64,000 bases of DNA from positions 15,004,001 through 15,068,000 of the forward strand of contig OZ365112.1 in the NCBI GenBank assembly GCA_977030845.1, written 5' to 3'. The notes below the pieces were generated by a model that searched no databases, was not told the origin of the DNA, and worked only from the letters and a program-made list of their open reading frames with translations. Shown here piece after piece: positions 18,901 to 60,300 of the stretch (the stretch's first letter is position 1; every line of letters begins with the position of its first letter). A program made the position numbers and the translations under genes. The stretch comes from Fimbriosthenelais zetlandica. Lineage: Eukaryota.

Positions 18901-20087
18901 AGACATTGACACTGCATGAACCAGACACCGCTCAGATGTTCTACCGCAAAAATATGACGACGCTAAAAACTGCTAAGTAATCACACTCACAAAAATAGTT
19001 TCTTGAAAGCAAACATATATCCCTGACGTTTTTATTTAACCCCGCCGACCTAAATAAAATAGAAGCGAAGGAGACAGTAATTTGAAACTGGTTTTAAAAA
19101 GATGGGAGGACTTATCATTGTGGGCGTATGACCAAATGTGTATACGTGAATGTGCTTGGATCAATAATTTTTTGATGTTGAAACAGATGGGAAAAATCAT
19201 GGAGACTGGGTGTGGGGCTCGACCATATAAGAAATGGATAAGAAATACATGTGGGAGAACATAAATGTATTGTTAGAGGTGAATAGTGTATGGTGGGCAA
19301 AGAAGAGTGGTGGGAAATCTTCCCTGGACATCTGTTAAATATTATCACAACTTTTCTTGTTAAATGTTCTCAAAACACGCATAAATATGGGGGATGATAT
19401 CTAATGCACAATAAATAATCAGTCGTGTATTACTTCAAAGATAGCACACTGAGAAAAAAAGTGAAATGCTCTCCTTATCGGATTCCATGTTCACAATGTT
19501 CAAATGTCTCTATGATTATAGCAGTGCTATGTTAAATTCAGTTTGGAAATATGATTTTAAGGCAAACAATGTGTTTAATTATTTAAGTTTGTAGTTAAAT
19601 ATTGCCCCCAAAACTGAAGATCAGGTCTTTGTATGTCTCTGATACCATTAGGCAATTATATATCGCGCTAAATGATATGTCTAAATTGAAATCTGAAGAT
19701 CTGTTTTTCTGTAGATCTATAGTAATTCCTAAACCAAACAAAATGAGTCATTGACAAAACCCTGGGAGGTAAACCCATGTACTAATATTGCGTCAGTCTA
19801 TTGTACGCATCAATGATAATTCATCACAGTATTGAAGCTAAATGGTGACGCAATTTCCTTTGTCAGTTCTGTGTATTAGATCAGTTAAAGGCTTCTATGA
19901 TTCAAAGGCTTGATTTGTACCCAATATTACATAAAAGCCCTGGATACTGCTCTTTCAAGTGCTCATTATTTCTTGACGAATAACAAATTATATTATATAA
20001 ATTGATATTTTCTATGATAAGATATGCATTGAACTTTATTTATGTTTCCTATGAGTGTGACTAACAAATGTTTTTCTCTCATTTCAG

Positions 20088-20153
20088 CGATGGCAGAGAC
20101 GGTTTTTCGTTCTCTATGATGATGGAGAGCTTACTTATTCCGTGGATGAAAAT
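20088..20153 (+). CDS. MPRIP: MPRIP-like coding exon 3 ([22 protein letters not shown])
   Basis: Pyrimidine tract plus CAG acceptor, AAT|GTAAGT donor, phase 0-0. Carries the PH-domain WQRRFF.LY motif of the MPRIP family. Confidence 0.95.
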
Positions 20154-23100
20154 GTAAGTATTATATCTAAGAAACAAATAGCCCAGCAATCTTGGGCTGA
20201 ACTTGGACCCCAGATATTGAACTCGTTAATAGCTTAATTTGACTTTAATGTACACTTGTGAGCACATATAAATAAGGGTTTTATTGCCGGAATGTGTCTC
20301 TTTTGGAAGTGTGAAGATTTGATTCGTGCCACTGCCTCCTCAAGTCTTTTCCTGTCCCACTTTTCTTCTTAGATCGTGACAAGAACGAAGCTTTTTAAAG
20401 TGCTTGACACTTGAAGCCAATCGTAAAGTTAATGTAGCCAGGTTGATGAGATAATTTACATGGCATTGACATTCATTGGTCGATCTGGATGATATGGGTA
20501 GGAGGACCATCATTGTATGATGTTTTGATTAGACATGGGAATGCTATTATTTTTTATCAATTTTTTCACCAGAAAAATGTACAGTTGGTCTCTGAAGTCA
20601 CATGTGATACATCACACTTTAAACAATTTCTGGAAGAAAAATACATCGGCCATATGTTCATAATGCTTACATGCATGTCTTGCATGATGATATTGATATT
20701 TTGTCCAGGACTATGTTGTCCTCGTAAGATCACAGAACAGCTGTTTAGGATCGAGATCAAATGTTAGGAAGGATATGGTCTTTATCGTGTGAACCCTTGA
20801 CTTTAAATGTTAGAGATTTATGCCTTAGCGTGAGGTACAACAGAAGGCCTTCCATACTGCACCATTTGTGGAGAGTCAACATTTTATTTCTCGTAGTAAA
20901 AAAAAACTCAGGTCCATTTCCTTGTGAGAGGTTTTCTTTTCTCCATCTGACACCTTTGAAAGTGCTCCTGATGAAGTGTGATACAGACACTCAACCCAGA
21001 TAAGGAAAAAATATGTCAGGAAGTTTGACAAAACAAATAAGTAAGATAATGGGTTCTTCTGGTGCAGACTGCCCTTGATATATTGTGGGTGTCCTTTCTC
21101 AATCTGTCATTGCTTGTAAAAGCTGCATTAGTGCGAGTTATCGGGTGGCAATAACTATAGGCTCTGATCTTTCTGGGTTTGTCTGGTGGCTTAAAGCTGG
21201 GAAACCAGATGTTTCCCTTTAGAAGATTTATATTCCTCCCTCAAGACCTTTCCCTCCCATTAAAGCCATTACATTAAGTATTCACCATATGACATTTGTA
21301 ACAAGAGTATAGAACTGGCAGGCAGGTATAAATGGATCTTTATAGTGTTAAGGTATAGAAGAACCGCCTCCTGGGTAGCATGAATTCCTCATCACAAAAA
21401 GGATGAACATTTTTAAATCCATAGTTTAGAGGTTAACAGATCAGGGCCATGGGAAAACGGTGAAATCAAATGTTAAAGCCGCAATGAATGCATTGAAATG
21501 ATGGATTTTAATGAATATCGGACATATACCCATGGGAACAGATCCACCCCATAGGAGCACTTTAGGCACCCACTCGTGAAGAGGGACTTGCATGTTTAGC
21601 TTTTACAATGATTAGATCCTTTTGTTCATGTATCTGGGAAACCTAGTGTGTGTTCACAGCTGGTTTATGGTATAGGTCTGCTGGAAGGTTATATGTCCTG
21701 AGATACCATTGTCATCACCTATCATGTGAATTACCACAATCATTCACAACACTAACCACAGGTATCTCCAGCTCCTTCACCAACACTTCCACCACATACC
21801 ACTCTACCACTGTTGCATGAATATGATGTCCAAGCCCCTCTTCTGCTGGCCAATATTGCCTTTAAAATAGTTGTGCCAATATTTTGCATTCATTTTGTGC
21901 ATACGCTCAGCTGCTCCATGATCGAAACGCATCCGAATCGTTCCAGACAAAAATGTTCTGGGACCAGACCAGGACTGAACTTCCGCGTCTGAACTTCTGG
22001 TCCTATTTAATGATCATAAAAACATAGATAATCAGATTATGACAATGGACATGCAATACTCGGATGATCCACTCGTGAACCCGGGGTGAGGTGGGGAGGG
22101 ATGCTGCCTTAATGAGTTATCAATCAGTATTATTGAGACAGGGGGGCTGGCTAGATTGGATGTAATTATGGTATAGAGCTGCCACTCTGAGAGCTCATCC
22201 TGCACGAGTCTGTCTACACACTGATAGCTGTAATCATGTTATCAACCAGTATGTGAGATTATCACTCAATTGGTGGCCACTCCTGTTGTGGATTAGGCCT
22301 CTGAGCCTTCTATATGTTTGCCCAATATAAAGGGATATAATGCTAAATATGGTCTGCTTTTAGTACATAAATGTATAGGCAAAGAGCTCTTTGGTAAAGG
22401 TATTCCCACCAGGAATGCAATTTCTATTCATGAGATAATTGAGTATATTTTAAAATTGGTGATGGTGTTGAGGTGTTGAAAGGACATTTTAAAGGAGGAT
22501 GTATCGAGGAGAAAATTATATACCGTACTTATAATTTATGTCATTGAATTTGTGGAAATTCTATTTAAGCCTGATGTATCTAGGTGTAAATACCAATTTC
22601 TTTGTCACTCTTGATAGATTTAGTAAGATTACCTCAAAGGGAAATTAGAATGCACGCTCAATTTGGGTTCAAGTGGTTGTGAAATCAGGGAGTCAATTTG
22701 ACTCTCAACCCGTAGCTAATAAATGGAGGAGGGTGTGTGGGAGAGGTTGTCCTTGTATGTGAGCCCACGAGAGTGTGTCCTAACATAGCCTCAGTATTTA
22801 TTAATATGCGATCATCATGTAATTGTATGTGTGTATGGGTCACACACGTTTGGCATGTGGTGTGTTCATGTAGCTTGGAAAAGTGAGTGTGGAATATTTG
22901 GCTTTGTGACAAAATCCTCCTGGGTCAAGCGGACTAAAGCTGGCTCTAAATACCTGCGGTAGACTGGCTCTATATGAAGTCTTAGCATTCCTCGGAGATG
23001 CATAAACACGAGGGCAAAAATAAACTTATGACATGGGTGCTCAGCGTGCTTGGACAAACAAGCAGACTGTGATGAACACAAAAAGAAATACACTTCCCCT

Positions 23101-43302: not shown

Positions 43303-44202
43303 ATGATGTCGTCTGACAGTGATAACTTGGCCTGGTACTGTAGCCTGTGTGGTCACAACCATTCAGCCTATAAAGAACCAATCTCACTCTCCTTGTCTGA
43401 CGATGAAGATCCATTACCTCCCTTAAGTGGACCCTTCCATTGTCACCTCGCCAGCTTAACTTCCAGGCCATGTTCTGCACAAAATCTATATGGGTGCATA
43501 CCCCCTGATCCCTGGTCATCCATGGGCGATGGGATTCCACAATTGAAAACGCACCAAGAGACCAGTTATTTGAACCACACAAACAGTTATCAAAATTGGC
43601 CTAATGGTAGAAACATATCAAGTGGATCAACTCCATTTAGCAGATTCAAAAAGACTAAAGGCTACTCACATAATGGAAGAAAAGCTAAGATAAAGTCATT
43701 TCTGCATTTTGATACCAGACCTACAACACAAACGCATAGAAATAAATGTAGGGTATCGATGAGTCTCAAAATTCCAAAATCTCTAAGGAATCCTGTCATT
43801 AACAGTCACTTAAACAGTAGTTCAGTACGGGATTGTCCACCTATCAAAAATGATGTACTGAATCATAAGTTCCAGCATGAGATTCCTTCTGACCAAGGAT
43901 TTTGGAGAGGATCTGATGTAAATCGTTACAAATCATCATCTGCTCGGACTAGATTTGAAGACCAAAGACTTGATGTTGAAGAACATTCACTCAGTGCTCA
44001 TAATCTTGACCAAAACTTTAGAGCAGATGGAAAAGTGCAGCAAAATTGCCAAAATAAGAGATCAAACTGCCCTGGATGGGTTGAGGAACTTTGTCAATTA
44101 GAAAGAGCAGACTCTGATTCTGAGGTTGGTCACCCCCTAAAGAATATCAAAATAGCATCTATAAGTTTTGTGCCAATTATTAGCAGGTTAATCATTTTGT
44201 GA
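43303..44202 (+). CDS. 299-aa Ser/Asn/Lys-rich ORF just upstream of exon 4; putative large alternative first exon of the MPRIP-like gene
   Basis: 900 nt open in AT-rich intronic DNA, where a chance ORF this long is very unlikely. It ends 97 nt before exon 4. In-frame donor candidates: GAG|GTTGGT (44124, phase 0, fits exon 4) and CAG|GTTAAT (44186, phase 2, fits exon 5). Confidence 0.65.
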   Translation: MMSSDSDNLAWYCSLCGHNHSAYKEPISLSLSDDEDPLPPLSGPFHCHLASLTSRPCSAQNLYGCIPPDPWSSMGDGIPQLKTHQETSYLNHTNSYQNWPNGRNISSGSTPFSRFKKTKGYSHNGRKAKIKSFLHFDTRPTTQTHRNKCRVSMSLKIPKSLRNPVINSHLNSSSVRDCPPIKNDVLNHKFQHEIPSDQGFWRGSDVNRYKSSSARTRFEDQRLDVEEHSLSAHNLDQNFRADGKVQQNCQNKRSNCPGWVEELCQLERADSDSEVGHPLKNIKIASISFVPIISRLIIL

Positions 44203-44298: not shown

Positions 44299-44450
44299 GT
44301 GGGTACCGTCCCCCAAGGTGTGATCGACATGAACAAGTGTTGTGACGTTCACGACGCTGAAGCCATGACGTCACACCAAATGTCTATCGCCGTCAAAACG
44401 CCAGACAAAACAACCTACATCAAAGGCAGTGACAAGCATGAAATTGCCAG
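44299..44450 (+). CDS. MPRIP: MPRIP-like coding exon 4 (VGTVPQGVIDMNKCCDVHDAEAMTSHQMSIAVKTPDKTTYIKGSDKHEIAR)
   Basis: TTGTTTTTGTCTTGTCAG acceptor, CAG|GTAAAT donor, phase 0-2, 152 nt. Matches the remembered PQGTINMNQC..TPEKEHFIRA. Confidence 0.95.
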
Positions 44451-44744: not shown

Positions 44745-45716
44745 GTAGGTGTCGCCACTCTCATACATGCACCTCTAACACCATGTCATGCTTTCCATAG
44801 GAGCTTTCCTTCTTTTTGGAAGGAACCTTCCATTCAAAAGTCTATCTTTTTAGTTTTCTTGGATAAATCCCAGTTAAATACATCTTCAATTAAACACATA
44901 GTACACAGAAAATGCAAAAGAGGGCATTTTCGTTCCATTGCATTGAAATATTATTGGTTTAATTCTCCTTCCCAAATTCCCAAATGATTGTAAGTCTTGT
45001 TCGTGTTGGTTCTTGGATTGCGTTGGGTTTTCAAAATGGCACAACCTTATTCATAAATGGATTGGGTGCCTAGATTTGGGGTTGGAACAATGCTAACCGG
45101 TGAGGGTTTACTTTGGATCAAATGGATTTTATATACCAGATCGTTTGTACATCAGATCCCTGTTTAAGTAAATGATCTGATTTTCCTTCACTTTGTTACC
45201 ATGAGGGATAATAATGTACTACTCGGTTGCGCTTGTCATAACAGGATGTGCATGTGGGGCTTTGGGTGCAGAAATTAATGAATGGCAACTCAGGAGTCCC
45301 TGGTTTTCCAAGTATAGTTCAGTGCAAGAAATACCTACCCAGAAATGCAGATATTTTGCACACTTCATACCCTGGTGCTGGTTGGTCATATTTCAATATA
45401 AAATGGATTGGTTCCTTATGTTATTATTTGAGTTTCTTGTGAATTTGGTGAGAACTAATAATTGGGATTTTAGCCACAACAATTATTTGCACCAGGGTCT
45501 GAATGTGGGCTCCTAGCTTGTGATACATGGTATAGACCCCTGCCAATCTTCCCTACCAATTCCCAAGTACCTCTGCATTCCCCAGCGAAAAATCCCAACC
45601 TCACTCAAGAAGGGGCGTGAATTTAATCAAGGAGCTTATATGCTCTTTGATTTAATGGAGGTAAACACTCTTTCTATTTGAATGCGTTTCTGCTGCTATG
45701 TGTCTCGTTCTTGTAG

Positions 45717-45749
45717 CCTTCGCCAGGTGGGGACTCAGGCTGTGAGCAG
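45717..45749 (+). CDS. MPRIP: Probable 33-nt micro-exon of the MPRIP-like gene (PSPGGDSGCEQ)
   Basis: Strong acceptor (TGTCTCGTTCTTGTAG) and donor (CAG|GTAAAG). Phase 0-0, open and in frame with exon 5. No homology support. Confidence 0.55.
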
Positions 45750-47482
45750 GTAAAGCTGTTCTCTCCTCAAACATAGACCCGACAGTGAATGAGTTGTTAG
45801 ATATCCTGTTGCCAATAGCTCGTCTCCCTGCTTTTTGCAAAACAAATGCTCTAAATGATCTGACTGCTTTATTGGCTGTATGGATGTATCCCTGGAATCT
45901 TCAGTCTTGTGACCTGGTCCATGTGCATAGTTTAAGTTTTTAAGCCCTTCCTTATAGATCTCTGAATGGATAGAATTTAAATAAGCTTTTGTGCATTTTG
46001 TCTGTTAAGGGAGTATGGAGTAATGCACAGATAGATTCACAGCTTTGCATGGCTTCCCATCTTGATGTAGTAAAATGCACCCTTGACGTTTCCCAGCATC
46101 AAAGTCACTCTATGCATCTTCAGCACTTTCCTTTAGTCCAGTTACTTTCTCTGTTGTCTTTATTTATATCGTACTATATTATCAAAAAACCGCAGTGGAA
46201 AGTCTTCATATTGATATTGTAATGAAATGCTGGAGACATCTCTGGTTTTCCCCTAACAATCTGACCTACCACACCAGACTATTCCAGACAAAAGTATTCG
46301 CTTCCACTTTTTGATACCATGTCTCCATTCCATGTATGGTTAAAGTCCACAAGGGAAAGGGCAGATGGTTCTGGTTAGTCTGAAATAGTTGACTTTTTGT
46401 CACATTTATCATTAGAGTGTGTGGACGGTTGTGTGCCTCAGTATTTCTATGCGTCCGTTCGTTTGGCCAGGTGTTAAGTTGTTTGCTACATTACACGGGT
46501 TAATATTCTTTGTTTCGCTCTCACCTTGATTATCGACCAGATCATCATGTCTTTGCCTCGATAGATATCGCCATGTTTATACTGGTATCCATAGTTACCC
46601 GGCATATTGCCTCCTCTATTCTAGTTGACCATGACTCACGCTTTCATGAAGTCATCAAAATTGTATCCAGAGAAAAGAACAGCATTAAAAAGTGCCAATG
46701 GGGGAGTTGTATTCGTGATTACCTTCAAGATTATTAACGAAGGTGGTTTCATCCATAATTGATATGGATACCTTGAGTTACATCATAATGTAAATGTTTT
46801 TTATCAACTTTTGCCATCCACCTGTCATTTTATAGTTTAAATTCCAACAGCCATTGCAGCTGCCAGGAATGGGAGTGTCAGGTGCATATTATTGAAATGC
46901 CCTCATCCCTGATATCATGACAAATGATGCTGCTGCTAATGATTACTGTAGACCCACATATTGTCTCTGTCAGTCATAATAAATGTTATACTGATGGATA
47001 AAAAAGTATTTTTTTACTGCATGCTATATAATTATGCTGTACAATCTTATATGTTTAGTCTATTACTTTGCCATATTTTGACCAAGGAGGGGTCACTCAC
47101 TAAACTTATAATATATACATGAAGCATATTCCAAATGCTATGTCCTGAACTTGGGGTCAGATTCAAGTTAATTTTCATTTGCTGAACACATATCTGTGTA
47201 TTTACTATGAACTCTTGAATAATGGAGATTAAACTCAAGTTGAACTTCCCAAGTCCTTTTGAAGTCCTTGCAAAATTATTGATGAAGAAATTCATAAGCA
47301 AAACAGAACATTATACCTATCGGTTCTGTTGTGCACAAACTTATTGTACAAAGTACTGTAGACCTAGGACGTCCAAGTGAATTGGAAACGGAGATATTTC
47401 TCCTTCAATATTGAGGTAATTCCAGGAGAAATCAATCAAGGCAGCTCATAGAAAGAAACTTAATCAAAGTTTAAAAATAGCC

Positions 47483-47902
47483 ATGAGAAGGATTGTGGAT
47501 GTTTTAAGTGTGGAGGAGGTTAACAAGACCCTGAAGGAATGGCTCCGTGAAAACGAAGATGTCTCACAGAGAGAATATGTGGGCATTGGCTTTATGTGTA
47601 TCAGGGACAAAATCTATCACGAGGGTGAACTGACCAACGCTAGCGTCACTATCCATAACCTGGAGATGGAAGCAGAGGCTACCATAGAGACCAAAGACTA
47701 TAAAGGTCCGCTGAGAAAAACATTCAAAGTGAGACATAATGAAATCATCCGCAGTGATAAAGCCTTCAAGGCTCGGGAGATCTTTAAGAAAGGTTTGAAG
47801 CTACTATGGGAGATGCTGGTTGAATTCTTCGGCGGTATGGGAGTGAAGGTAGCAGGCAGACTTAGTCATGTTGACGAGCTAGAGGCGATCACTTGGAAAT
47901 GA
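47483..47902 (+). CDS. Unidentified 139-aa protein, intronless ORF nested in an MPRIP intron (or an alternative terminal exon)
   Basis: About 74 of 139 codons end in G/C by hand count, against AT-rich flanks. Many G-starting codons, start context GCCATG, globular amino-acid composition, AATAAA 160 nt after the stop. The frame is open from 47420, with a candidate acceptor TTCCAG| at 47425. No family recognised. Confidence 0.75.
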   Translation: MRRIVDVLSVEEVNKTLKEWLRENEDVSQREYVGIGFMCIRDKIYHEGELTNASVTIHNLEMEAEATIETKDYKGPLRKTFKVRHNEIIRSDKAFKAREIFKKGLKLLWEMLVEFFGGMGVKVAGRLSHVDELEAITWK

Positions 47903-48061
47903 ATTGAACTATATCTCATGTGTTAATGTGTACTCAAATCTACTGGTGGAAATCTATTATAATTTATTCTACCAAAATATTGAACTTTACTTGGATCAAG
48001 TCTTCGAGTTAAATGTTCAAAATATTCCAACTATTTTACCTCGCTTTACAATTGATTTCAC

Positions 48062-48067
48062 AATAAA
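48062..48067 (+). terminator. Polyadenylation signal AATAAA downstream of the 47483 ORF
   Basis: First AATAAA after the stop at 47902, followed by T/GT-rich sequence near 48100-48170. Confidence 0.45.
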
Positions 48068-49046
48068 GCTTTCTTTGTCACGTGCAAAAAAAACCTGACG
48101 TACCTTTTGGGTTTTGCATGAAAGGTTCTACCCGCAATAAGTGATCTTTGTTATGTATTTTGTCTCCCATGAACTAAAGTCGAGTATGGCCAGGTAGATC
48201 TGCGTTCTCAATTGTCACATACCTGGCATAACTGCTTGTGTAAAAGTCTTCGCCGCCAAATTTGTTTCGTGGCTCTTGGTATATTTGTCAGAGGATTGTG
48301 AAAAGAAAAAAACATGAGAAAAATGTACTCCTCCATAAACCGTGGGTATTTACAGGGGATATTGTATGGGGGGGCGTGATACATGAAACTTATGAAGATA
48401 TACTTGAATACAGGGTACCTATATACCATTCCTGCTAACTTTAATTGGCTGAATTGACTGATGAATACACAATTGAAAAATGGTTTTGTACCACAATACT
48501 TGATGTAACTTCAAAATGATTTTATCTGAAATTCTAAAATTAGACAATTTTGTGTACATTAAAAATACAGCGATGAAAGATGATTAATCATTGGATGTAC
48601 CTTTGATGCCCGGGGCAGGTAAATTACTTTGTCCCCAGCGTCTAATATATGATCTAACGACACCTCACCCTGCCAATAACGCTCTTTGTGACAAAATACT
48701 CCACCCGAATTTGCCAAAAGAGACCTCACCCACAATTTATTTTTTCATCTACGCGGGAAAACCATCTGATCATATGTTTGGCTGCAAACATTGTAAATAC
48801 ATGTATTATTTGTTTGTGGAATTGAAACTCATTTAAACAAGAAAATCTGATAGGTTTGTCATTCCTATGACCTTTCTCTTGACCGTTCTGTCATGACCGT
48901 TCTCAAACCATGCAGTATTTATGAGTTCATAGACATTTAGTACATACTGATGGCTATTTTGTAACCACAAAGCCTCCACCCCTAATCATTCCCTATCGTT
49001 TATAAGTTCATTTTCTTACCCGGATCAATACCATCTCTAAAACAAA

Positions 49047-55100: not shown

Positions 55101-56492
55101 ATGTGCTTCCATCTGGAGGGCAATGCTTTAATGACTACCTGTGAAGGGGAATTGGGAATAAGAGCTTCTGTTTTGAAAATGAATGCAAATCTCTCCCAAG
55201 TCATTACAATATCCGAGGTGTTAAAACTATTGTAGAAATTGCGTGGAAACAATGCATTCTCTCCCTTCTGTATTCTTAGCAGTGCCATAACCAAACATGT
55301 ATTGTACATGTGCCATTTCCACCTGTCGCATGTAAGCCTATGTACCCCTACGATTATTTTTTGTTGTGATGGAATGTTATGCAAAAGGCTTAAGTGCTAC
55401 CCAGTGGGAATGCTGGCCTTCAGTAGTACTGGAGTGGGGAACAAGCGGATAAACCGTGAATGAAGTATTTAATTAGCCAGGCCCCGCTAGCAGAGATTTC
55501 TGATACTGAACCAACAACCTGTGAAATGATTTACACAATACCTAGAGACTAATCTGATAATACTATATTACATTTGTCAACTTCGAAATATTCTCTTTCA
55601 ATGGAGTTGTATAAATATGGGTTCTTGCCACTTTGGGTGACATTTTTAATGTGATTAGAACAATTATTAAAACCCTGGGTTTCAAAGAAAAAAATGTATA
55701 GTGACACAGTGCCCAAAAACAAATTACAAACAGGTAACGGGTCCAATGACTTAAGGCATGAGCCTAGCTGGGACATTGTTTTTACTGGACTCATTAAGCT
55801 GGTCTACTGAAGGGGGACCAGGCCGTCATCCTATTGCAGCTGCTTAAAATGGCTAAGCCAGGATTAAGGGTACAGGTAGCTGAGAAGTAGCTGCCATAGT
55901 CTCAGAGATGGAGGATAGAAATTACTGCATGTTGAGAGATTAGGAACAGTATATTGGCAACATTGGTGAGAGGCGGAACATTATGTTCACACTTTCACAT
56001 GTGAAAATCAAGAGGGAACTGTACCTTTTACTGATCCATTATATGGATTTGTCACTTTTCTGAGGAATATTAACAGGAAGATTCGTCCACTTTAAGGGAA
56101 AAAATACATTCACTGCTAAATTCAAACACTTTGAACATAGCTCAGAAGTGATTGGATTGCCGATTGGAACTGATTTTTCTTCTCATTTTGTTGGACATGC
56201 CTATCTGACAAAATGTTGGATAATGCGCAGAGGCGACGCTGGACATGGACCAAGTATGAACCCCTTTTGTGATGAATTATCCTTTAAAATTGCAATTTAA
56301 AATGCTCAAAAAATGAGATCTGCATTTCTTATCCTTTAGGCTATAATATTCCCTTTGATTTTCGTGTATGTCTCATATTTCTTTAAAGAAATACTTTATA
56401 GTTTCTTAAATTAATGCATAATTATTTGGAAAGATAAAGTATGGTATTTTATCACTAGTGGGAGTTTAGCACTGGCCTTATGGAAGCAGTAC

Positions 56493-57365
56493 ATGAAGAA
56501 CATAGGGATCTCCAGAGGATCAAGGTCGTCAGACGGTGAAGGCAGTACCCTGGAGGAGGTGAGGTCAGTGGGCATCAGGTGGGTCAGTCAGGGTGACCTC
56601 TACGATGACCACCACCCTGACCATCACAGTCCAGTTACTGTTAACAGGAGCAGAAGTATGTCAGAAGGCCTTGACTTGCTGAGCACAGACAGACGACATA
56701 GGAACAAACTCACATCCAGAACTGAACTGCTGGTACCCAAAAGCCCAGAGCAACAGAGAAATGCTGTCATGTTTCAAGTCAGGTCTCCACATGGGACTCC
56801 CAGAATGGGCAGGCGTTGTCTGCAAGGGACTAAGACTAGGATTTCATATGAGGAACATTCTAATTCCCCTCTCCCTACCGGACCCACCAATACAAGACAG
56901 AGAAGACAAAGGAGAGAGAGGAGGAGAAGGACATTTTGTACTCCAGGGGATCCATCCCTATCAGGGAGCTCTCCTCGTCCACAGGAGACTTCCCACCCTC
57001 AAGCCATGGGCAATTCATCAGAAATCCCTGGTGTCACACCCATGAACAATACGAGTTCCCAAAGGCGAATGAGACCTGGCCCACTGTCAACAGATAATTA
57101 TTCTAACCAAGAGGACATGTTGAACTTGAGAAAGGTGTTGTCAGGGTACAATGATGGCATACACAAATTTAAAAACATTCAATCCGGAAATTTAGCTGAA
57201 AATCCTTTTAGCAGAAAAGATAGGTCTGTGAAGAGAAATGGCAGTCTGATTGACAGTGTAAAGGAGGGTGACCCTACTCGCACAAAGATTGGTCTTCGTA
57301 TTCAAGCTAGAGTAAGCAAGTCTCCTGATGGTTTGGACAGAATGACTGTCTATCGATTGGTCCAG
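56493..57365 (+). CDS. 291-codon Ser/Arg/Pro-rich exon ending at a strong donor; putative large alternative first coding exon of the MPRIP-like gene
   Basis: An 882-nt ORF, clearly more GC-rich than its flanks. The donor CAG|GTAAGA at 57365/6 is exactly in phase 0, two codons before the ORF stop. No good acceptor upstream. The assignment to MPRIP is inferred from strand and position. Confidence 0.68.
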
Positions 57366-60300
57366 GTAAGATAGTGAAATAAATAAAGAAATCACATAAG
57401 ATGATGTATGTGTGGTGATATATATGTGATCTACATTTCTTTACTCTGTGGAGAGTTTTGAGTGGTATGAACTTAACCATGCAGAGGGGCTAGATGTTTT
57501 TATTGTTAGTGTTTGATATGTTTCACACACTCTCTTCCTGACTGACACAGTTTAAACAAAGGACCTGTTCTTTGACAGAGCTTCCTTCTCTATGGTTTTG
57601 TTCTTTGAATCTTGGGAAAGTGAAGGGTGTGCATACATGTACATTTAAGAAAAACACAAAATACATCTCTCAATGAGCATTGTCATGTACATTCTATATG
57701 TATTGACATTTGGATCAGTCGTTGCGATTTGGTTAGGCAACAGAAGGCTTCTTGTCTTGTGAACCAGAAGAGGAATATTTTGGACGCGTCTATACTAGAG
57801 TGGTGGTATACCTGGCTCCACTCATGTAGTCCTTCCTCGCATCGCTTCTCAAAGACAATGTTAGTTTTGATCATAATCTTCGGTATCAACGTACGCAAAA
57901 TTTAGACCTCAATACCTCTATTGTTCTCGTGTGTCCAAGAACAGACAGTTAATTGGGGATGCTTCATGGAGGCTTCAGTCTGGGTAATGATCTTGACTGT
58001 TGGCCGATGTCATTAACACATGCTTTGTAATGATAACTAATATGCAGAAATCATCAGAAGTGATTAGTGTTGATACTTGACTCTTCAGTATTTGGAATCG
58101 TATGTAGATTAGGATAGAATGACAAATCTTTAGTTGCCGTGACAGGAGCTGGTTGATCAAGATATTAAATTCCTGTGGTTTCTTCCCTGACAGAATTAGC
58201 CACAGCTGACATCATTGTAGTTTGATAAAGGACATTGCCTTTGTCATGACTGATAGATAATGTTGCATTTCATTTCATCATTACAAACATAATCCATCCG
58301 TGGACGGTTGACATGACATGTATGATTATGAATGTCAACCTTTCATTATGTTCTGAAGCATTTCTGACAGACCATCTTGTTTGGCTTGCATGGTGATGTC
58401 TGCTTTGGTAATATGCATCACCAGTGTTGTTATCCACAAGTAAGGAATGTCTAGGAGATCAAGAAGTACTCCATTCAAGGTGTCTTAAATTGCTGTGCTT
58501 CAATGGCCTGCTCTTCAACCCTGCTCTTTTTCAAATTCCTCAACCCTAAACTCTATGACACCTTTGGGTCTACTCTGATAAGATCAAATCCTCTGAACCC
58601 AACTTAGTTTTGCCATATGCTTTTAGGGAAACAATACCCCTGGACACAATTTATTCTTACAAAGTGAATGGGCTGTACCAGCCCTTGACCCCCTGTCGTT
58701 GAATCTCTAGTTTGTTTCTATAGGAATCTTGCCATTTTAACTCGGGAAATGGTGACGGAATGGTCATTCATTTTTCAGTTATAGGTGTAACATGGAATAT
58801 TTGGGTTTAATATTTTCTTCGGTGGTTGTGCTTACATTTTGATTTTACCAATTGAGGCATCATCAATATAGCAGAAGGTAAGTTCTTATAAATATTTAAA
58901 GATGTATTCAGAAATGTCGAAACTGTACACCTTAAGTCCTCTGGCATTTATCAATAGCTGAAAAGCAGAAGACAGCAACCAGGGGTATTGTTGAGTAAAT
59001 GGGGTTCTCTTAATCTCTTAAATCTTTTCAGGAATTAATTCCTTTGATCAGTCACTCACCGAGTTAAAACTAGTGTAAATATCTGGACCAAACATTTCCA
59101 AAAGGGGCTTAACTCTGAATTTCAACATCTGCATCATTGACTTATCGCTCTTATTGAGAAAGCCATTGACTTCACTCCAAGCAAAAGCTGGCCTCGTTTT
59201 CTGGCATACCAGAGCTGCGTTTAACCCCTATAATGGTATTTGGTAACGGAGTTGATCATTTCCCGAGCGTTGACAAGAGGAGAGAGTTGAGAGGTCGTGT
59301 CTGGAAAGTTTGTAATGCGGGTGAAAGGCGTGGAACGACAAGCCTATTATCCAGACCATCAATTTGATAGGAGATAATTGAGGTGGGATCGATTACTGCT
59401 CTTTCTACCTGGAGCCATGCTGGCTTTAGGGGAGGGTATGAACTTTCTACATTCCTACCCTTAACCTGTCTCAATATAGAACAAGTTCTCACTATATACG
59501 CAATATATTATGTAATGACAATTTTTAGAAGACCCTAAGACAACAAAGCGATCCACATCCTACTGGACCGAACATGTCTATATGACTAGTTGATGGTTTT
59601 CCCAACCATATTTGTCCCAGAATAACAGAAGACCCTTGGAACAACCCTTCCAGTATTTTGGCACTTTCGGTTCATATCAATGCCCCGGTAAACAAGAGGA
59701 ATACCTAGTCGTAAACCATATCTCTGATCCTAAACAACACCCGTATGAACACATGCATGTAGAGCATGTCAGACATAGGAAGGCCCCCATCCTTTATCCC
59801 CTAAACATATGAAGCAGAGCTACCATTACAACCCATCCCTAATCTGTCTTCATAGCTAGGTTTTCAAGCAGATCCTCAGCTGACAAATGGATTAAGCTGT
59901 TTAGCCTAAACTGTGAGATATGTCAGTCGTGCTTGATCATATCTAGTTACCTGGTCGTCCATGTTCTAATACCTGCTCCATGTATTGAAACCAGGTTTCA
60001 TAGGGCTTTCATGTTGGGTTAGGTTTTAGCATGTATATGTATAAGGCTAATATTGTTTGCCCATGTGGGTATTGTAATATGATCCCAAGCCACCTGCTAC
60101 CACTGAATACGATAACACTAATCCTGACTCCATTCTGGATCTCAAGAGATCATCGTCAACTAGTATACATCTCTTGAGATGATCCCATATGTGAGACTTA
60201 CTTACATCCAATAACTGACAGGAAAATCCATCCATGTACTGAGGACATTTGCCCAAAACGGTTTAGTTTACTTTGTTCATTGTTTCTTATGTATTTATTC

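What the first reader, a model, noticed from the sequence alone, without database searches (positions are those of the whole stretch)
47420..48067. Orphan globular protein gene hidden in an MPRIP intron
Seen: MRRIVDVLSVEEVNKTLKEWLRENEDVSQREYVGIGFMCIRDKIYHEGELTNASVTIHNLEMEAEATIETKDYKGPLRKTFKVRHNEIIRSDKAFKAREIFKKGLKLLWEMLVEFFGGMGVKVAGRLSHVDELEAITWK. It has coding-like codon usage and sharp compositional edges. The pattern suggests an N-terminal helix, a beta-rich middle and a C-terminal amphipathic cationic/hydrophobic helix (IFKKGLKLLWEMLVEFFGG), followed by its own AATAAA. Length alone is not significant here; composition is the evidence. The acceptor candidate at 47425 is phase 0 and open, so it could also be spliced to MPRIP exon 5 or the micro-exon as a terminal exon, giving a short PH-fusion protein. 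Inference: a nested lineage-specific, retroposed or horizontally acquired gene, possibly membrane-interacting. This is the best candidate for undescribed biology in the window.
Basis: partly seen in the sequence, partly recalled or inferred. Interest (0 to 1): 0.75.

Follow-up and report, generated by a model that had tools for sequence, protein, structure and literature searches.

The report
Conserved unnamed small gene inside intron
A real, evolutionarily conserved 139-residue protein gene of a family that no database names sits by itself inside an intron of a PH-domain (MPRIP-like) gene of an invertebrate; it is not an extra exon of that host gene, and its function is still unknown.

Summary
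The ORF is real (47483-47902, +, 139 aa) and is a protein-coding gene under long-term purifying selection. Against a 58%-identical gene in another species, pN is 0.25 and pS is 0.82 (saturated). Differences by codon position are 37/30/84.

That other copy lies 2.5 kb downstream of the same 33-nt host micro-exon, on the same strand, so the nesting is old and orthologous.

The gene belongs to a small unnamed family: two diverged paralogues in this genome (one with a stop), and about 15 unnamed clusters among billions of proteins. There is no Pfam, PDB or named relative.

AlphaFold gives a confident beta-alpha-alpha-beta4 domain plus a long C-terminal helix. It has no convincing solved-structure match (best Z 4.4, REDD1).

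The host exons end in phase 2, so splicing to 47425 would stop after 15 codons.

A conserved upstream motif that follows TATA-like elements, ATG-free leaders and an AATAAA point to an independent transcription unit.

I found no evidence for a transposon, a virus, horizontal transfer or membrane insertion. No RNA data could be reached.

Verdict: an ordinary but genuine lineage-restricted nested gene of an undescribed family. The scan had not noted it elsewhere.

The parts
47483..47902 (+). Coding sequence (139 codons plus TGA) of the nested gene. Residues 1-92 form an alpha/beta domain, 93-120 an amphipathic helix, and 121-139 a low-confidence tail ending in the family's conserved C-terminal A-I-x-W/Y-K motif.
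   Evidence: ORF. Purifying selection against L004: pN 0.25, pS 0.82. Codon-position differences 37/30/84, p=3.6e-8. Family alignments A1 and A4. Model.
47430..47438 (+). Conserved upstream motif AATCAATCA, 45 nt before the ATG. Putative transcription start / initiator-type or factor-binding element of the gene's own promoter.
   Evidence: The same 9-mer (AATCAATC[C/A]) lies on the gene's strand upstream of three homologues (L004 3429, L007 306, L008 7409), each downstream of a TATA-like element, and is inverted upstream of paralogue L002. Background is 4 per 64 kb on both strands. Function is inferred.
47407..47414 (+). Weak TATA-like element (AATATTGA) 16-23 nt upstream of the motif.
   Evidence: The position corresponds to TATAAAAG in L004, ATATAAT in L007 and TATATATTGA in L008. 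It is degenerate in this copy. Inference.
47439..47482 (+). Putative 5' leader without any ATG.
   Evidence: There are 0 ATG in 286 nt of the three putative leaders (window, L004, L007), against 6.7 expected; Poisson P=0.0012.
48062..48067 (+). AATAAA polyadenylation signal 160 nt after the stop codon.
   Evidence: Homologues carry ATTAAA or AATAAA 77-189 nt after their stops. Use is not shown.
48086..48093 (+). Run of eight A, 18 nt after the AATAAA, at the expected cleavage site. It could be a remnant of a retrocopy tail or chance.
   Evidence: No flanking direct repeat of 7 nt or more.
45717..45749 (+). 33-nt micro-exon of the host gene (tag|CCTTCG...GAGCAG|gtaaag). It and about 40 nt of upstream intron are conserved in the other species, which marks the synteny.
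   Evidence: 88% identity over 78 nt to L004 985-1062; the rest of the intron does not align. Two of the six substitutions are silent in the frame set by the upstream exon.
44299..44450 (+). Host-gene exon encoding the middle of a PH domain. It ends in phase 2 (..GCC AG|gtaaat).
   Evidence: Pfam PH E=0.06.
20061..20234 (+). Stop-free stretch containing the host exon for the start of the PH domain (motif [10 protein letters not shown]). Exon borders were not determined.
   Evidence: Pfam PH_8 E=0.044 and PH E=0.12. PDB PH domains at E about 0.65.

Best explanation
This is an independent, single-exon protein-coding gene. It is nested in the sense orientation in a long intron of a PH-domain (MPRIP/outspread-like) gene of an invertebrate, probably an annelid.

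It is most likely transcribed from its own small promoter: a TATA-like element, then a conserved AATCAATC[C/A] element about 50 nt before the ATG. It is translated from the first AUG of an AUG-free leader and polyadenylated after the AATAAA 160 nt past the stop, giving an mRNA of roughly 0.65 kb.

The product is a 139-residue soluble intracellular protein with no signal peptide and no membrane segment. It belongs to an undescribed family of 110-160-residue proteins. Each has a compact beta-alpha-alpha-beta4 domain, a long amphipathic helix, and a short conserved C-terminal A-I-x-aromatic motif.

The invariant residues sit at core positions or at helix caps and turns, and no Cys/His/Ser triad or acidic cluster stands out. 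I therefore think it most likely acts as a non-enzymatic binding or adaptor module, with the C-terminal motif as a docking peptide.

Shown: the ORF, selection, family, synteny, and frame incompatibility with the host exons.
Inferred: promoter, transcript ends, cellular location, and binding role.
For: Gene reality:
- A 58%-identical intact homologue exists (P0001).
- pN is 0.25 against pS 0.82.
- Third-position excess of 37/30/84 differences, p=3.6e-8.
- Between the two species only the ORF and the host micro-exon align; the rest of the intron does not.

Orthologous nesting:
- The micro-exon lies 1.7 kb (window) and 2.5 kb (L004) upstream of the ORF, on the same strand.

Family:
- Two paralogues on another chromosome, 44% identical (intact) and 40% identical (one TAG).
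- 9 true relatives in an exhaustive search of 1.8 billion representatives, plus further unnamed ones.
- Invariant residues W20 L21 N24 E31 V33 G34 G36 T70 D92.
- Tree.

Independence from the host:
- Phase mismatch with the host exons.
- In-frame stop upstream of the ATG in the orthologue.
- All full-length members start at the same Met, before strand 1 of the fold.
- Members occur at other loci.
- Shared upstream motif behind TATA-like elements.
- No ATG in 286 nt of leaders, P=0.0012.
- Polyadenylation signals present.

Not a repeat:
- The 2.6 kb around it is single copy.
- Flanks of the paralogues are unrelated.
- No terminal repeats.

Fold:
- pLDDT is 88-94 over residues 1-90. A second member gives the same topology at mean pLDDT 81.5.

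Soluble:
- Maximum Kyte-Doolittle 19-mer score 1.15; net charge 0.
Against: - No RNA evidence: no sequencing run of this organism could be listed. Transcription, start site and poly(A) site are therefore inferred.
- This copy's TATA-like element is degenerate.
- A 5'-UTR intron, or occasional splicing from other host exons, cannot be excluded.
- The binding-module reading rests only on where conserved residues fall in a predicted secondary structure. No coordinates were available to test whether the polar invariants (N24, R30, E31, N52, T70, D92) cluster into a site, so an enzymatic role is not excluded.
- One homologue (P0004, L008) seems to begin at a splice acceptor. The family is therefore not uniformly intronless, and its N-terminus may vary.
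Confidence: 0.75

Rival explanations
1. The ORF is an alternative 3'-terminal exon of the host PH-domain gene and gives a short PH-fusion protein.
For: It lies on the same strand as the host. An AG at 47424-47425 follows a weak pyrimidine stretch, and the frame is open from 47420. The orthologue also has a 'ttccag' upstream of its ATG.
Against: The PH exon (44299-44450) and the micro-exon (33 nt) end in phase 2. Splicing to 47426 then reads RNQSRQLIERNLIKV-stop. In the orthologue an in-frame TAG (L004 3468-3470) separates 'ttccag' from the ATG. The 20 residues upstream of the Met are not conserved, while the Met and strand 1 are. Family members exist at unrelated loci.
Confidence: 0.04
2. It is a domesticated or decaying gene of a transposable element or endogenous virus that landed in the intron.
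For: It is intronless, sits in an intron, and has few dispersed copies of which one is broken. Its distribution is patchy. In other organisms two family genes sit 2 nt and 137 nt apart, which is unusually tight for animal genes. The structural neighbours are 'uncharacterized' proteins of molluscs, a coral and reptiles.
Against: The locus is single copy at DNA level. There are no terminal or inverted repeats of note and no transposase, integrase, RT or capsid domain nearby or in the protein. There is no match in predicted viral structures or phage families. The copies differ by 55-60% in protein with saturated silent sites, and the position is kept between species.
Confidence: 0.07
3. It is an old retrogene: an mRNA copy of a family member inserted into the intron. 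This is a statement about origin and is compatible with the best explanation.
For: The coding region is intronless. An A8 run at 48086-48093 lies exactly where a poly(A) tail would begin, 18 nt after the AATAAA. The paralogues are on another chromosome.
Against: No target-site duplication of 7 nt or more. No intron-bearing parent was found in this genome. Nearly all members seen elsewhere are also single-exon. The gene carries a promoter motif shared with other members, and a processed copy would not normally bring its promoter along.
Confidence: 0.15
4. The protein is a small enzyme (a hydrolase or nuclease-like domain) or a degenerate OTU-type or REDD1-type domain, rather than a plain binding module.
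For: There are invariant polar residues N24, R30, E31, N52, T70 and D92. Weak Foldseek hits to OTU deubiquitinases recur in four libraries. REDD1 (3lq9) is the best whole-domain match for both models: Z 4.4 and 4.2, with 83-84 residues aligned at 3.6 A.
Against: OTU chains reach only Z 2.8 or less on re-alignment, and the family has no conserved Cys or His. The REDD1 Z values are below the level typical of chance. hhalign of the family against this genome's own RTP801/REDD1 gene gives probability 0.5%. There is no Pfam hit. All the polar invariants sit at helix caps or turns in the model.
Confidence: 0.12
5. It is a chance or dead ORF with no function.
For: ORF length alone is not significant: the window has 4 stop-free frames of 160 codons or more. 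There is no expression evidence.
Against: An intact, syntenic, 58%-identical orthologue exists with saturated silent sites and strong third-position bias. The family-wide invariant residues and the confident fold also argue against it.
Confidence: 0.02

Closest known systems
Adh/Adhr nested in an intron of Drosophila outspread (osp), the fly homologue of MPRIP (McNabb et al. 1996, cited in PMC10409296; osp = MPRIP homologue in bioRxiv 10.64898/2026.05.22.727264)
   Same: An unrelated small gene with its own promoter lies inside a long intron of a gene of the MPRIP/outspread type.
   Different: The nested genes are unrelated (a short-chain dehydrogenase there, an unnamed family here), and the nesting events are independent. 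Identification of the host here as MPRIP-like is only weakly tested.
Lineage-restricted ('orphan') nested genes, e.g. the Cys-rich membrane gene in a receptor intron of this same genome
   Same: An intact small gene without named relatives sits inside an intron, and nothing ties it functionally to the host.
   Different: This one has detectable relatives: paralogues, a syntenic orthologue and about 15 clusters elsewhere. It also shows measurable purifying selection, lies in the sense orientation, and is a single exon.
REDD1/DDIT4 C-terminal domain (PDB 3lq9; Pfam RTP801_C)
   Same: It is the best solved-structure match for two family models. Both have two antiparallel helices packed on a four-stranded sheet. 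83-84 residues superpose at 3.6 A, Z 4.2-4.4.
   Different: Z is below the chance level quoted by the tool. There is no sequence or profile similarity (hhalign 0.5%), and the genome has its own canonical RTP801 gene. This family also has an extra N-terminal strand and a long C-terminal helix.
OTU deubiquitinase domain
   Same: Both share the beta-alpha-alpha-beta order. Low-level Foldseek hits recur.
   Different: Z is 2.8 or less on re-alignment, TM is about 0.2, and there is no catalytic Cys or His.
Uncharacterized AlphaFold-DB proteins A0A1R2C483, A0A210PXK3, K1RCB9, A0A3M6UMJ9 and reptile LOC proteins
   Same: They have a similar predicted fold (Foldseek probability 0.96-1.0, TM 0.42-0.52). 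Two of them are also about 140-156 residues long.
   Different: Identity is only 9-19%. They were not found by sequence search, nothing is known about them, and homology is not established.

Membership tests
Protein-coding gene under selection | Non-synonymous change far below synonymous change between orthologues; excess of third-position differences; indels in multiples of three | tested here: met
   pN 0.25 against pS 0.82. Differences 37/30/84 at codon positions 1/2/3, p=3.6e-8. The only length difference is a C-terminal extension.
Independent nested gene | Own promoter and own transcript ends, not spliced to the host | tested here: inconclusive
   Supporting signs: a shared upstream motif behind TATA-like elements, ATG-free leaders, AATAAA, and a phase mismatch with host exons. 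No RNA data were available.
Alternative terminal exon of the host (PH fusion) | Acceptor in a phase compatible with the upstream host donors, keeping the ORF in frame | tested here: not met
   Host donors at 44450 and 45749 are phase 2. Reading from 47426 then stops after 15 codons.
Alternative terminal exon of the host (PH fusion) | Open, conserved reading frame between acceptor and Met in the orthologue | tested here: not met
   An in-frame TAG at L004 3468-3470 lies between 'ttccag' and the ATG. The upstream residues are not conserved.
Transposable element / endogenous virus gene | Multiple similar copies with shared flanks; terminal repeats; element-type protein domains | tested here: not met
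   Single copy at DNA level. Only 3-4 protein-level copies at 40-44% identity with unrelated flanks. No repeats. No Pfam, PHROG or viral-fold match.
Processed retrogene | Intronless copy | tested here: met
   The whole domain is encoded in one ORF.
Processed retrogene | Poly(A) remnant and target-site duplication | tested here: inconclusive
   An A8 run at 48086-48093 lies 18 nt after the AATAAA, but no direct repeat of 7 nt or more flanks the unit.
Processed retrogene | Intron-containing parent gene | tested here: not met
   Both other copies in the genome are single-ORF. Most homologues elsewhere are too.
Horizontally acquired gene | Closest relatives in bacteria, viruses or another kingdom | tested here: not met
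   All true hits are unnamed, with GC of 33-42%. The longer contigs hold little else; one carries animal-type GPCR genes. There are no viral or phage hits. The search for related loci in viral contigs could not run.
RTP801_C / REDD1 | Match to the Pfam model or profile similarity | tested here: not met
   No Pfam hit. hhalign against this genome's own RTP801 protein gives probability 0.5%.
RTP801_C / REDD1 | Same fold at a significant Z | tested here: inconclusive
   Z 4.4 and 4.2, with 83-84 residues aligned at 3.6 A. It is the top whole-domain match for both models but lies below the tool's chance level.
OTU deubiquitinase | Catalytic Cys and His; OTU fold | tested here: not met
   No conserved Cys or His. 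Z is 2.8 or less.
Membrane or secreted protein | Signal peptide or hydrophobic segment | tested here: not met
   The maximum 19-residue Kyte-Doolittle mean is 1.15, and the N-terminus is charged.
Host gene = MPRIP / outspread | N-terminal PH domain of MPRIP type, followed by a long disordered region and a second PH domain plus coiled coil | tested here: inconclusive
   Two exon pieces give weak PH hits (E 0.04-0.12; PDB PH domains at E about 0.65). The [10 protein letters not shown] motif resembles MPRIP only from my memory. The downstream domains were not examined.

The most novel reading that the evidence does not exclude
The family is a previously unrecognised, ancient eukaryotic domain with a fold absent from solved structures. 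It would be shared at the structural level with uncharacterized proteins of a ciliate, molluscs, a coral and reptiles. In this worm lineage one member has been held for a very long time next to a conserved micro-exon inside the MPRIP-like gene, possibly because its expression is coupled to the host's transcription or splicing.
Probability: 0.15. Interest if true: 0.55.

Novelty: new member of a known kind. Interest (0 to 1): 0.38.

Why it matters
It adds a genuine, selected protein-coding gene that gene catalogues appear to lack: no source names any member of the family.

It also defines a small family with a confidently predicted domain that matches no Pfam model and no solved structure. That makes it a reasonable target for a new domain entry and for structure determination.

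The case shows how a nested intronic gene can be told apart from an alternative exon by splice phase and by comparison with an orthologous locus.

Without expression or functional data it remains one of many lineage-restricted genes of marine invertebrates. It does not bear on a long-standing question.

Tried and rejected
- **Pfam** on the protein and on all 15 aligned members: nothing.
- **PDB** sequence and profile search: nothing.
- **PHROGs**: nothing meaningful.
- **ESM Atlas by features**: no usable hit. Atlas by structure gave TM 0.42 or less for two models.
- **Foldseek** against PDB, viral structures and Swiss-Prot models: no hit at E below 0.1.
- **VIA-align wide search** for two models: best Z 4.4 and 4.3.
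- **OTU resemblance**: rejected at Z 2.8 or less.
- **REDD1 homology**: rejected by hhalign.
- **Two profile searches** of the 5.8-billion-protein set: only unnamed relatives.
- **Two sequencing-run searches** (RNA, any): none was listed, so read laying could not be used.
- **Paper search** for the accession numbers of the contigs that carry homologues: nothing.
- **Atlas searches** of the two large neighbouring ORFs, meant to name the host gene: uninformative.
- **Missing first exon of homologue P0004 in L008**: a profile search did not find it.
- **P0010 and P0011** from the exhaustive search are repetitive false positives.
- **The 19-nt inverted repeat** 47469-47487 / 48947-48965 (84% complementary): judged chance.
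Full report
**1. Observation**

- The stop-free frame opens at 47420, and AATAAA is at 48062-48067.
- GC rises from 0.31-0.35 upstream to 0.41-0.46 inside and falls to 0.33 downstream.
- The coding strand is purine-rich: AT skew up to +0.27 and GC skew about +0.2 inside, against about 0 outside.
- Length is not evidence. The window holds four stop-free frames of at least 160 codons.

**2. It is a real gene under selection**

A six-frame search of the window's own 447-Mb assembly finds two diverged paralogues on another chromosome.
- One is intact (44% identity).
- One has a TAG stop (40% identity).
- A doubtful fragment also turned up.

A word-indexed search and an exhaustive phmmer scan of 1.8 billion representatives find a 58%-identical protein, P0001. 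They also find eight true relatives of 111-157 residues and a 62-residue fragment, at 33-45% identity.
- Two long repetitive hits are false positives.
- Profile searches add a few more members.
- None carries a name or a Pfam domain, and none comes from UniRef.

Against the DNA that encodes P0001 (L004):
- pN is 0.25 and pS is 0.82, so silent sites are saturated.
- Differences fall 37/30/84 on codon positions 1/2/3 (p=3.6e-8).

The family alignment has invariant W20, L21, N24, E31, V33, G34, G36, T70 and D92, and a recurrent C-terminal A-I-x-W/Y/F-(K) ending.

**3. Synteny**

Between the window and the 4-kb contig L004 only two blocks align.
- One is the ORF: 68% identity over 311 nt.
- The other is a 78-nt block at 88% identity: window 45675-45752 against L004 985-1062.

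The second block is a 33-nt exon (45717-45749) with canonical splice sites and a highly conserved pyrimidine/TGC-rich upstream intron. It lies 1.7 kb (window) and 2.5 kb (L004) upstream of the ORF on the same strand. The nested gene was therefore already in this intron in the common ancestor of two species whose silent sites are saturated.

**4. The host gene and the fusion idea**

Plus-strand exon pieces at about 20061-20234 and at 44299-44450 give weak PH-domain hits (PDB PH domains).
- The first carries [10 protein letters not shown]. From memory, this resembles the N-terminal PH domain of MPRIP.
- I could not test host identity more strictly, so I call the host "PH-domain, MPRIP-like".

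The exon 44299-44450 begins in phase 0 and ends ..GCC AG|gtaaat, two bases into a codon. The 33-nt micro-exon keeps that phase.
- In L004 an in-frame TAG lies between the corresponding 'ttccag' and the ATG.
- The residues upstream of the Met are not conserved, whereas the Met and the first strand are.

The PH-fusion reading is therefore not supported.

**5. Signs of an own transcription unit (inferred)**

The 9-mer AATCAATC[C/A] occurs on the gene's strand upstream of the ATG in several loci:
- window: 47430, 53 nt before the ATG;
- L004: 90 nt before the ATG;
- L007: 143 nt before the ATG;
- L008: 2.6 kb upstream of the apparently spliced homologue;
- paralogue L002: present but inverted.

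Its background frequency is four per 64 kb on both strands.

In L004, L007 and L008 a TATA box or TATA-like element lies within about 35 nt upstream of the motif. The window has only a weak AATATTGA at that place.

The 286 nt between motif and start codon in the three loci hold no ATG, against 6.7 expected (P=0.0012).

Poly(A) signals follow the stop codons at +77 to +189 nt.

No sequencing run could be listed for this stretch, so expression is untested.

**6. Not a repeat, virus or transfer**

- The 2.6 kb around the gene is single copy.
- Flanks of the paralogues are unrelated.
- No meaningful terminal repeats were found.
- No transposon, viral or phage family or fold matches.
- Contigs with homologues have GC of 33-42%. 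The longer ones (L004, L008) hold little other coding sequence, and one carries rhodopsin-type GPCR genes.

Earlier notes of this scan call the genome an invertebrate, probably an annelid. I did not test that.

Retroposition remains open.
- For it: the gene is intronless, and an A8 run (48086-48093) sits 18 nt after the AATAAA.
- Against it: there is no target-site duplication and no intron-bearing parent, and the promoter motif is shared with other loci.

**7. The protein**

AlphaFold with the family alignment gives pLDDT 88-94 for residues 1-90.
- Topology: strand 2-5, helices 10-23 and 27-47, strands 53-58, 64-70, 79-84 and 87-90, then a helix at 93-120 (pLDDT 56-69) and a disordered tail.
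- A second member (P0005) gives the same topology at mean pLDDT 81.5.

No solved structure matches convincingly.
- Foldseek against PDB: E 0.47 or worse.
- All-against-representatives alignment: best Z 4.4 and 4.3. The tool states that unmatched models typically reach Z 7-8.
- REDD1 (3lq9) is the only hit covering the whole domain in both searches (83-84 residues, 3.6 A). However, hhalign against this genome's own RTP801 gene gives 0.5%.
- Recurrent weak OTU hits collapse to Z 2.8 or less, and no Cys or His is conserved.
- AlphaFold-DB clusters give uncharacterized proteins of a ciliate, a scallop, an oyster, a coral and reptiles at probability 0.96-1.0 but TM 0.42-0.52 and 9-19% identity. This is a lead, not established homology.

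The protein has no hydrophobic segment and no net charge.

The invariant residues fall in the core (W20, L21, V33, F37, I57) or at helix caps and turns (N24, R30/E31, N52, T70, G75, D92). I read the protein as a soluble binding or adaptor module. Its amphipathic helix probably covers the free face of the sheet, and the C-terminal motif may be a docking peptide. This last step is inference.

**8. Family structure**

In a maximum-likelihood tree the window copy groups with the syntenic P0001, then with P0002, P0003 and P0020. The two other copies of this genome are sisters. All 17 rows were kept, and the L016 upstream ORF sits on a very long branch.

In two metagenome-derived contigs a diverged second type of the family lies directly upstream of a typical member. 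This type lacks the W-L-R..N..R-E-Y-V-G motif. The gaps are 2 nt and 137 nt (hhalign 94%).

**9. Comparison with what is known, and verdict**

Nested genes in long introns are common. The fly MPRIP homologue outspread is itself the classic host of Adh (PMC10409296, citing McNabb 1996; bioRxiv 10.64898/2026.05.22.727264).

What is new here is the gene and its family, not the kind of arrangement. It is a genuine, conserved, unannotated gene of unknown function. Interest is moderate to low.

Noticed in passing
window 45675-45752 (exon 45717-45749); L004 985-1062: The host gene's 33-nt micro-exon and about 40 nt of TGC- and pyrimidine-rich intron before it are 88% identical between two species whose introns are otherwise unalignable. 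In the host frame it would insert 11 residues just after the PH-domain exon, before the expected C-terminal helix. It looks like a regulated (possibly neural-type) micro-exon.
   Followed up: partly
window 43303-44202 (+): A 299-codon ORF starting MMSSDSDNLAWYCSLCGH.. ends 97 nt before the host's PH exon, on the same strand. It has no Pfam family (only a zinc-ribbon hint at E 0.057) and no Atlas lead. It could be another nested gene, a large alternative exon, or chance.
   Followed up: partly
L016 1136-1564 and 1567-2010; L017 546-986 and 1123-1596: In two metagenome-derived contigs, a diverged 'type B' member of the family lies immediately upstream of a typical member, on the same strand. It lacks the WLR..N..REYVG motif but hhalign gives 94%. 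The gaps are 2 nt and 137 nt, so this is a conserved tandem pair with unusually tight spacing for an animal genome.
   Followed up: partly
L008 7380-7700 and 9980-10001: Homologue P0004 starts right after a strong acceptor-like tract (..ttttattttaaaag|ATG), at the position of family residue 19. A TATA/CRE-like element plus the AATCAATCC motif lies 2.6 kb upstream, followed by about 88-nt tandem repeats with donor-like sites. This member may have a 5' exon and an intron.
   Followed up: partly
G000 C21:6301290-6301646 (L003/L011): The third copy of the family in this genome has one in-frame TAG and lacks the upstream motif. It is probably a pseudogene.
   Followed up: partly
G000 C21:25343678-25344037 (L002/L010): The intact paralogue has a quite different, W/C/F-rich C-terminus without the A-I-x-W-K ending, and carries the promoter motif in inverted orientation about 190-250 nt upstream.
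   Followed up: no
window 56415-57371 (+): A 319-codon stop-free, Ser/Arg/Pro-rich stretch downstream on the host strand. It is presumably the host gene's large disordered central exon. It has no family match.
   Followed up: partly
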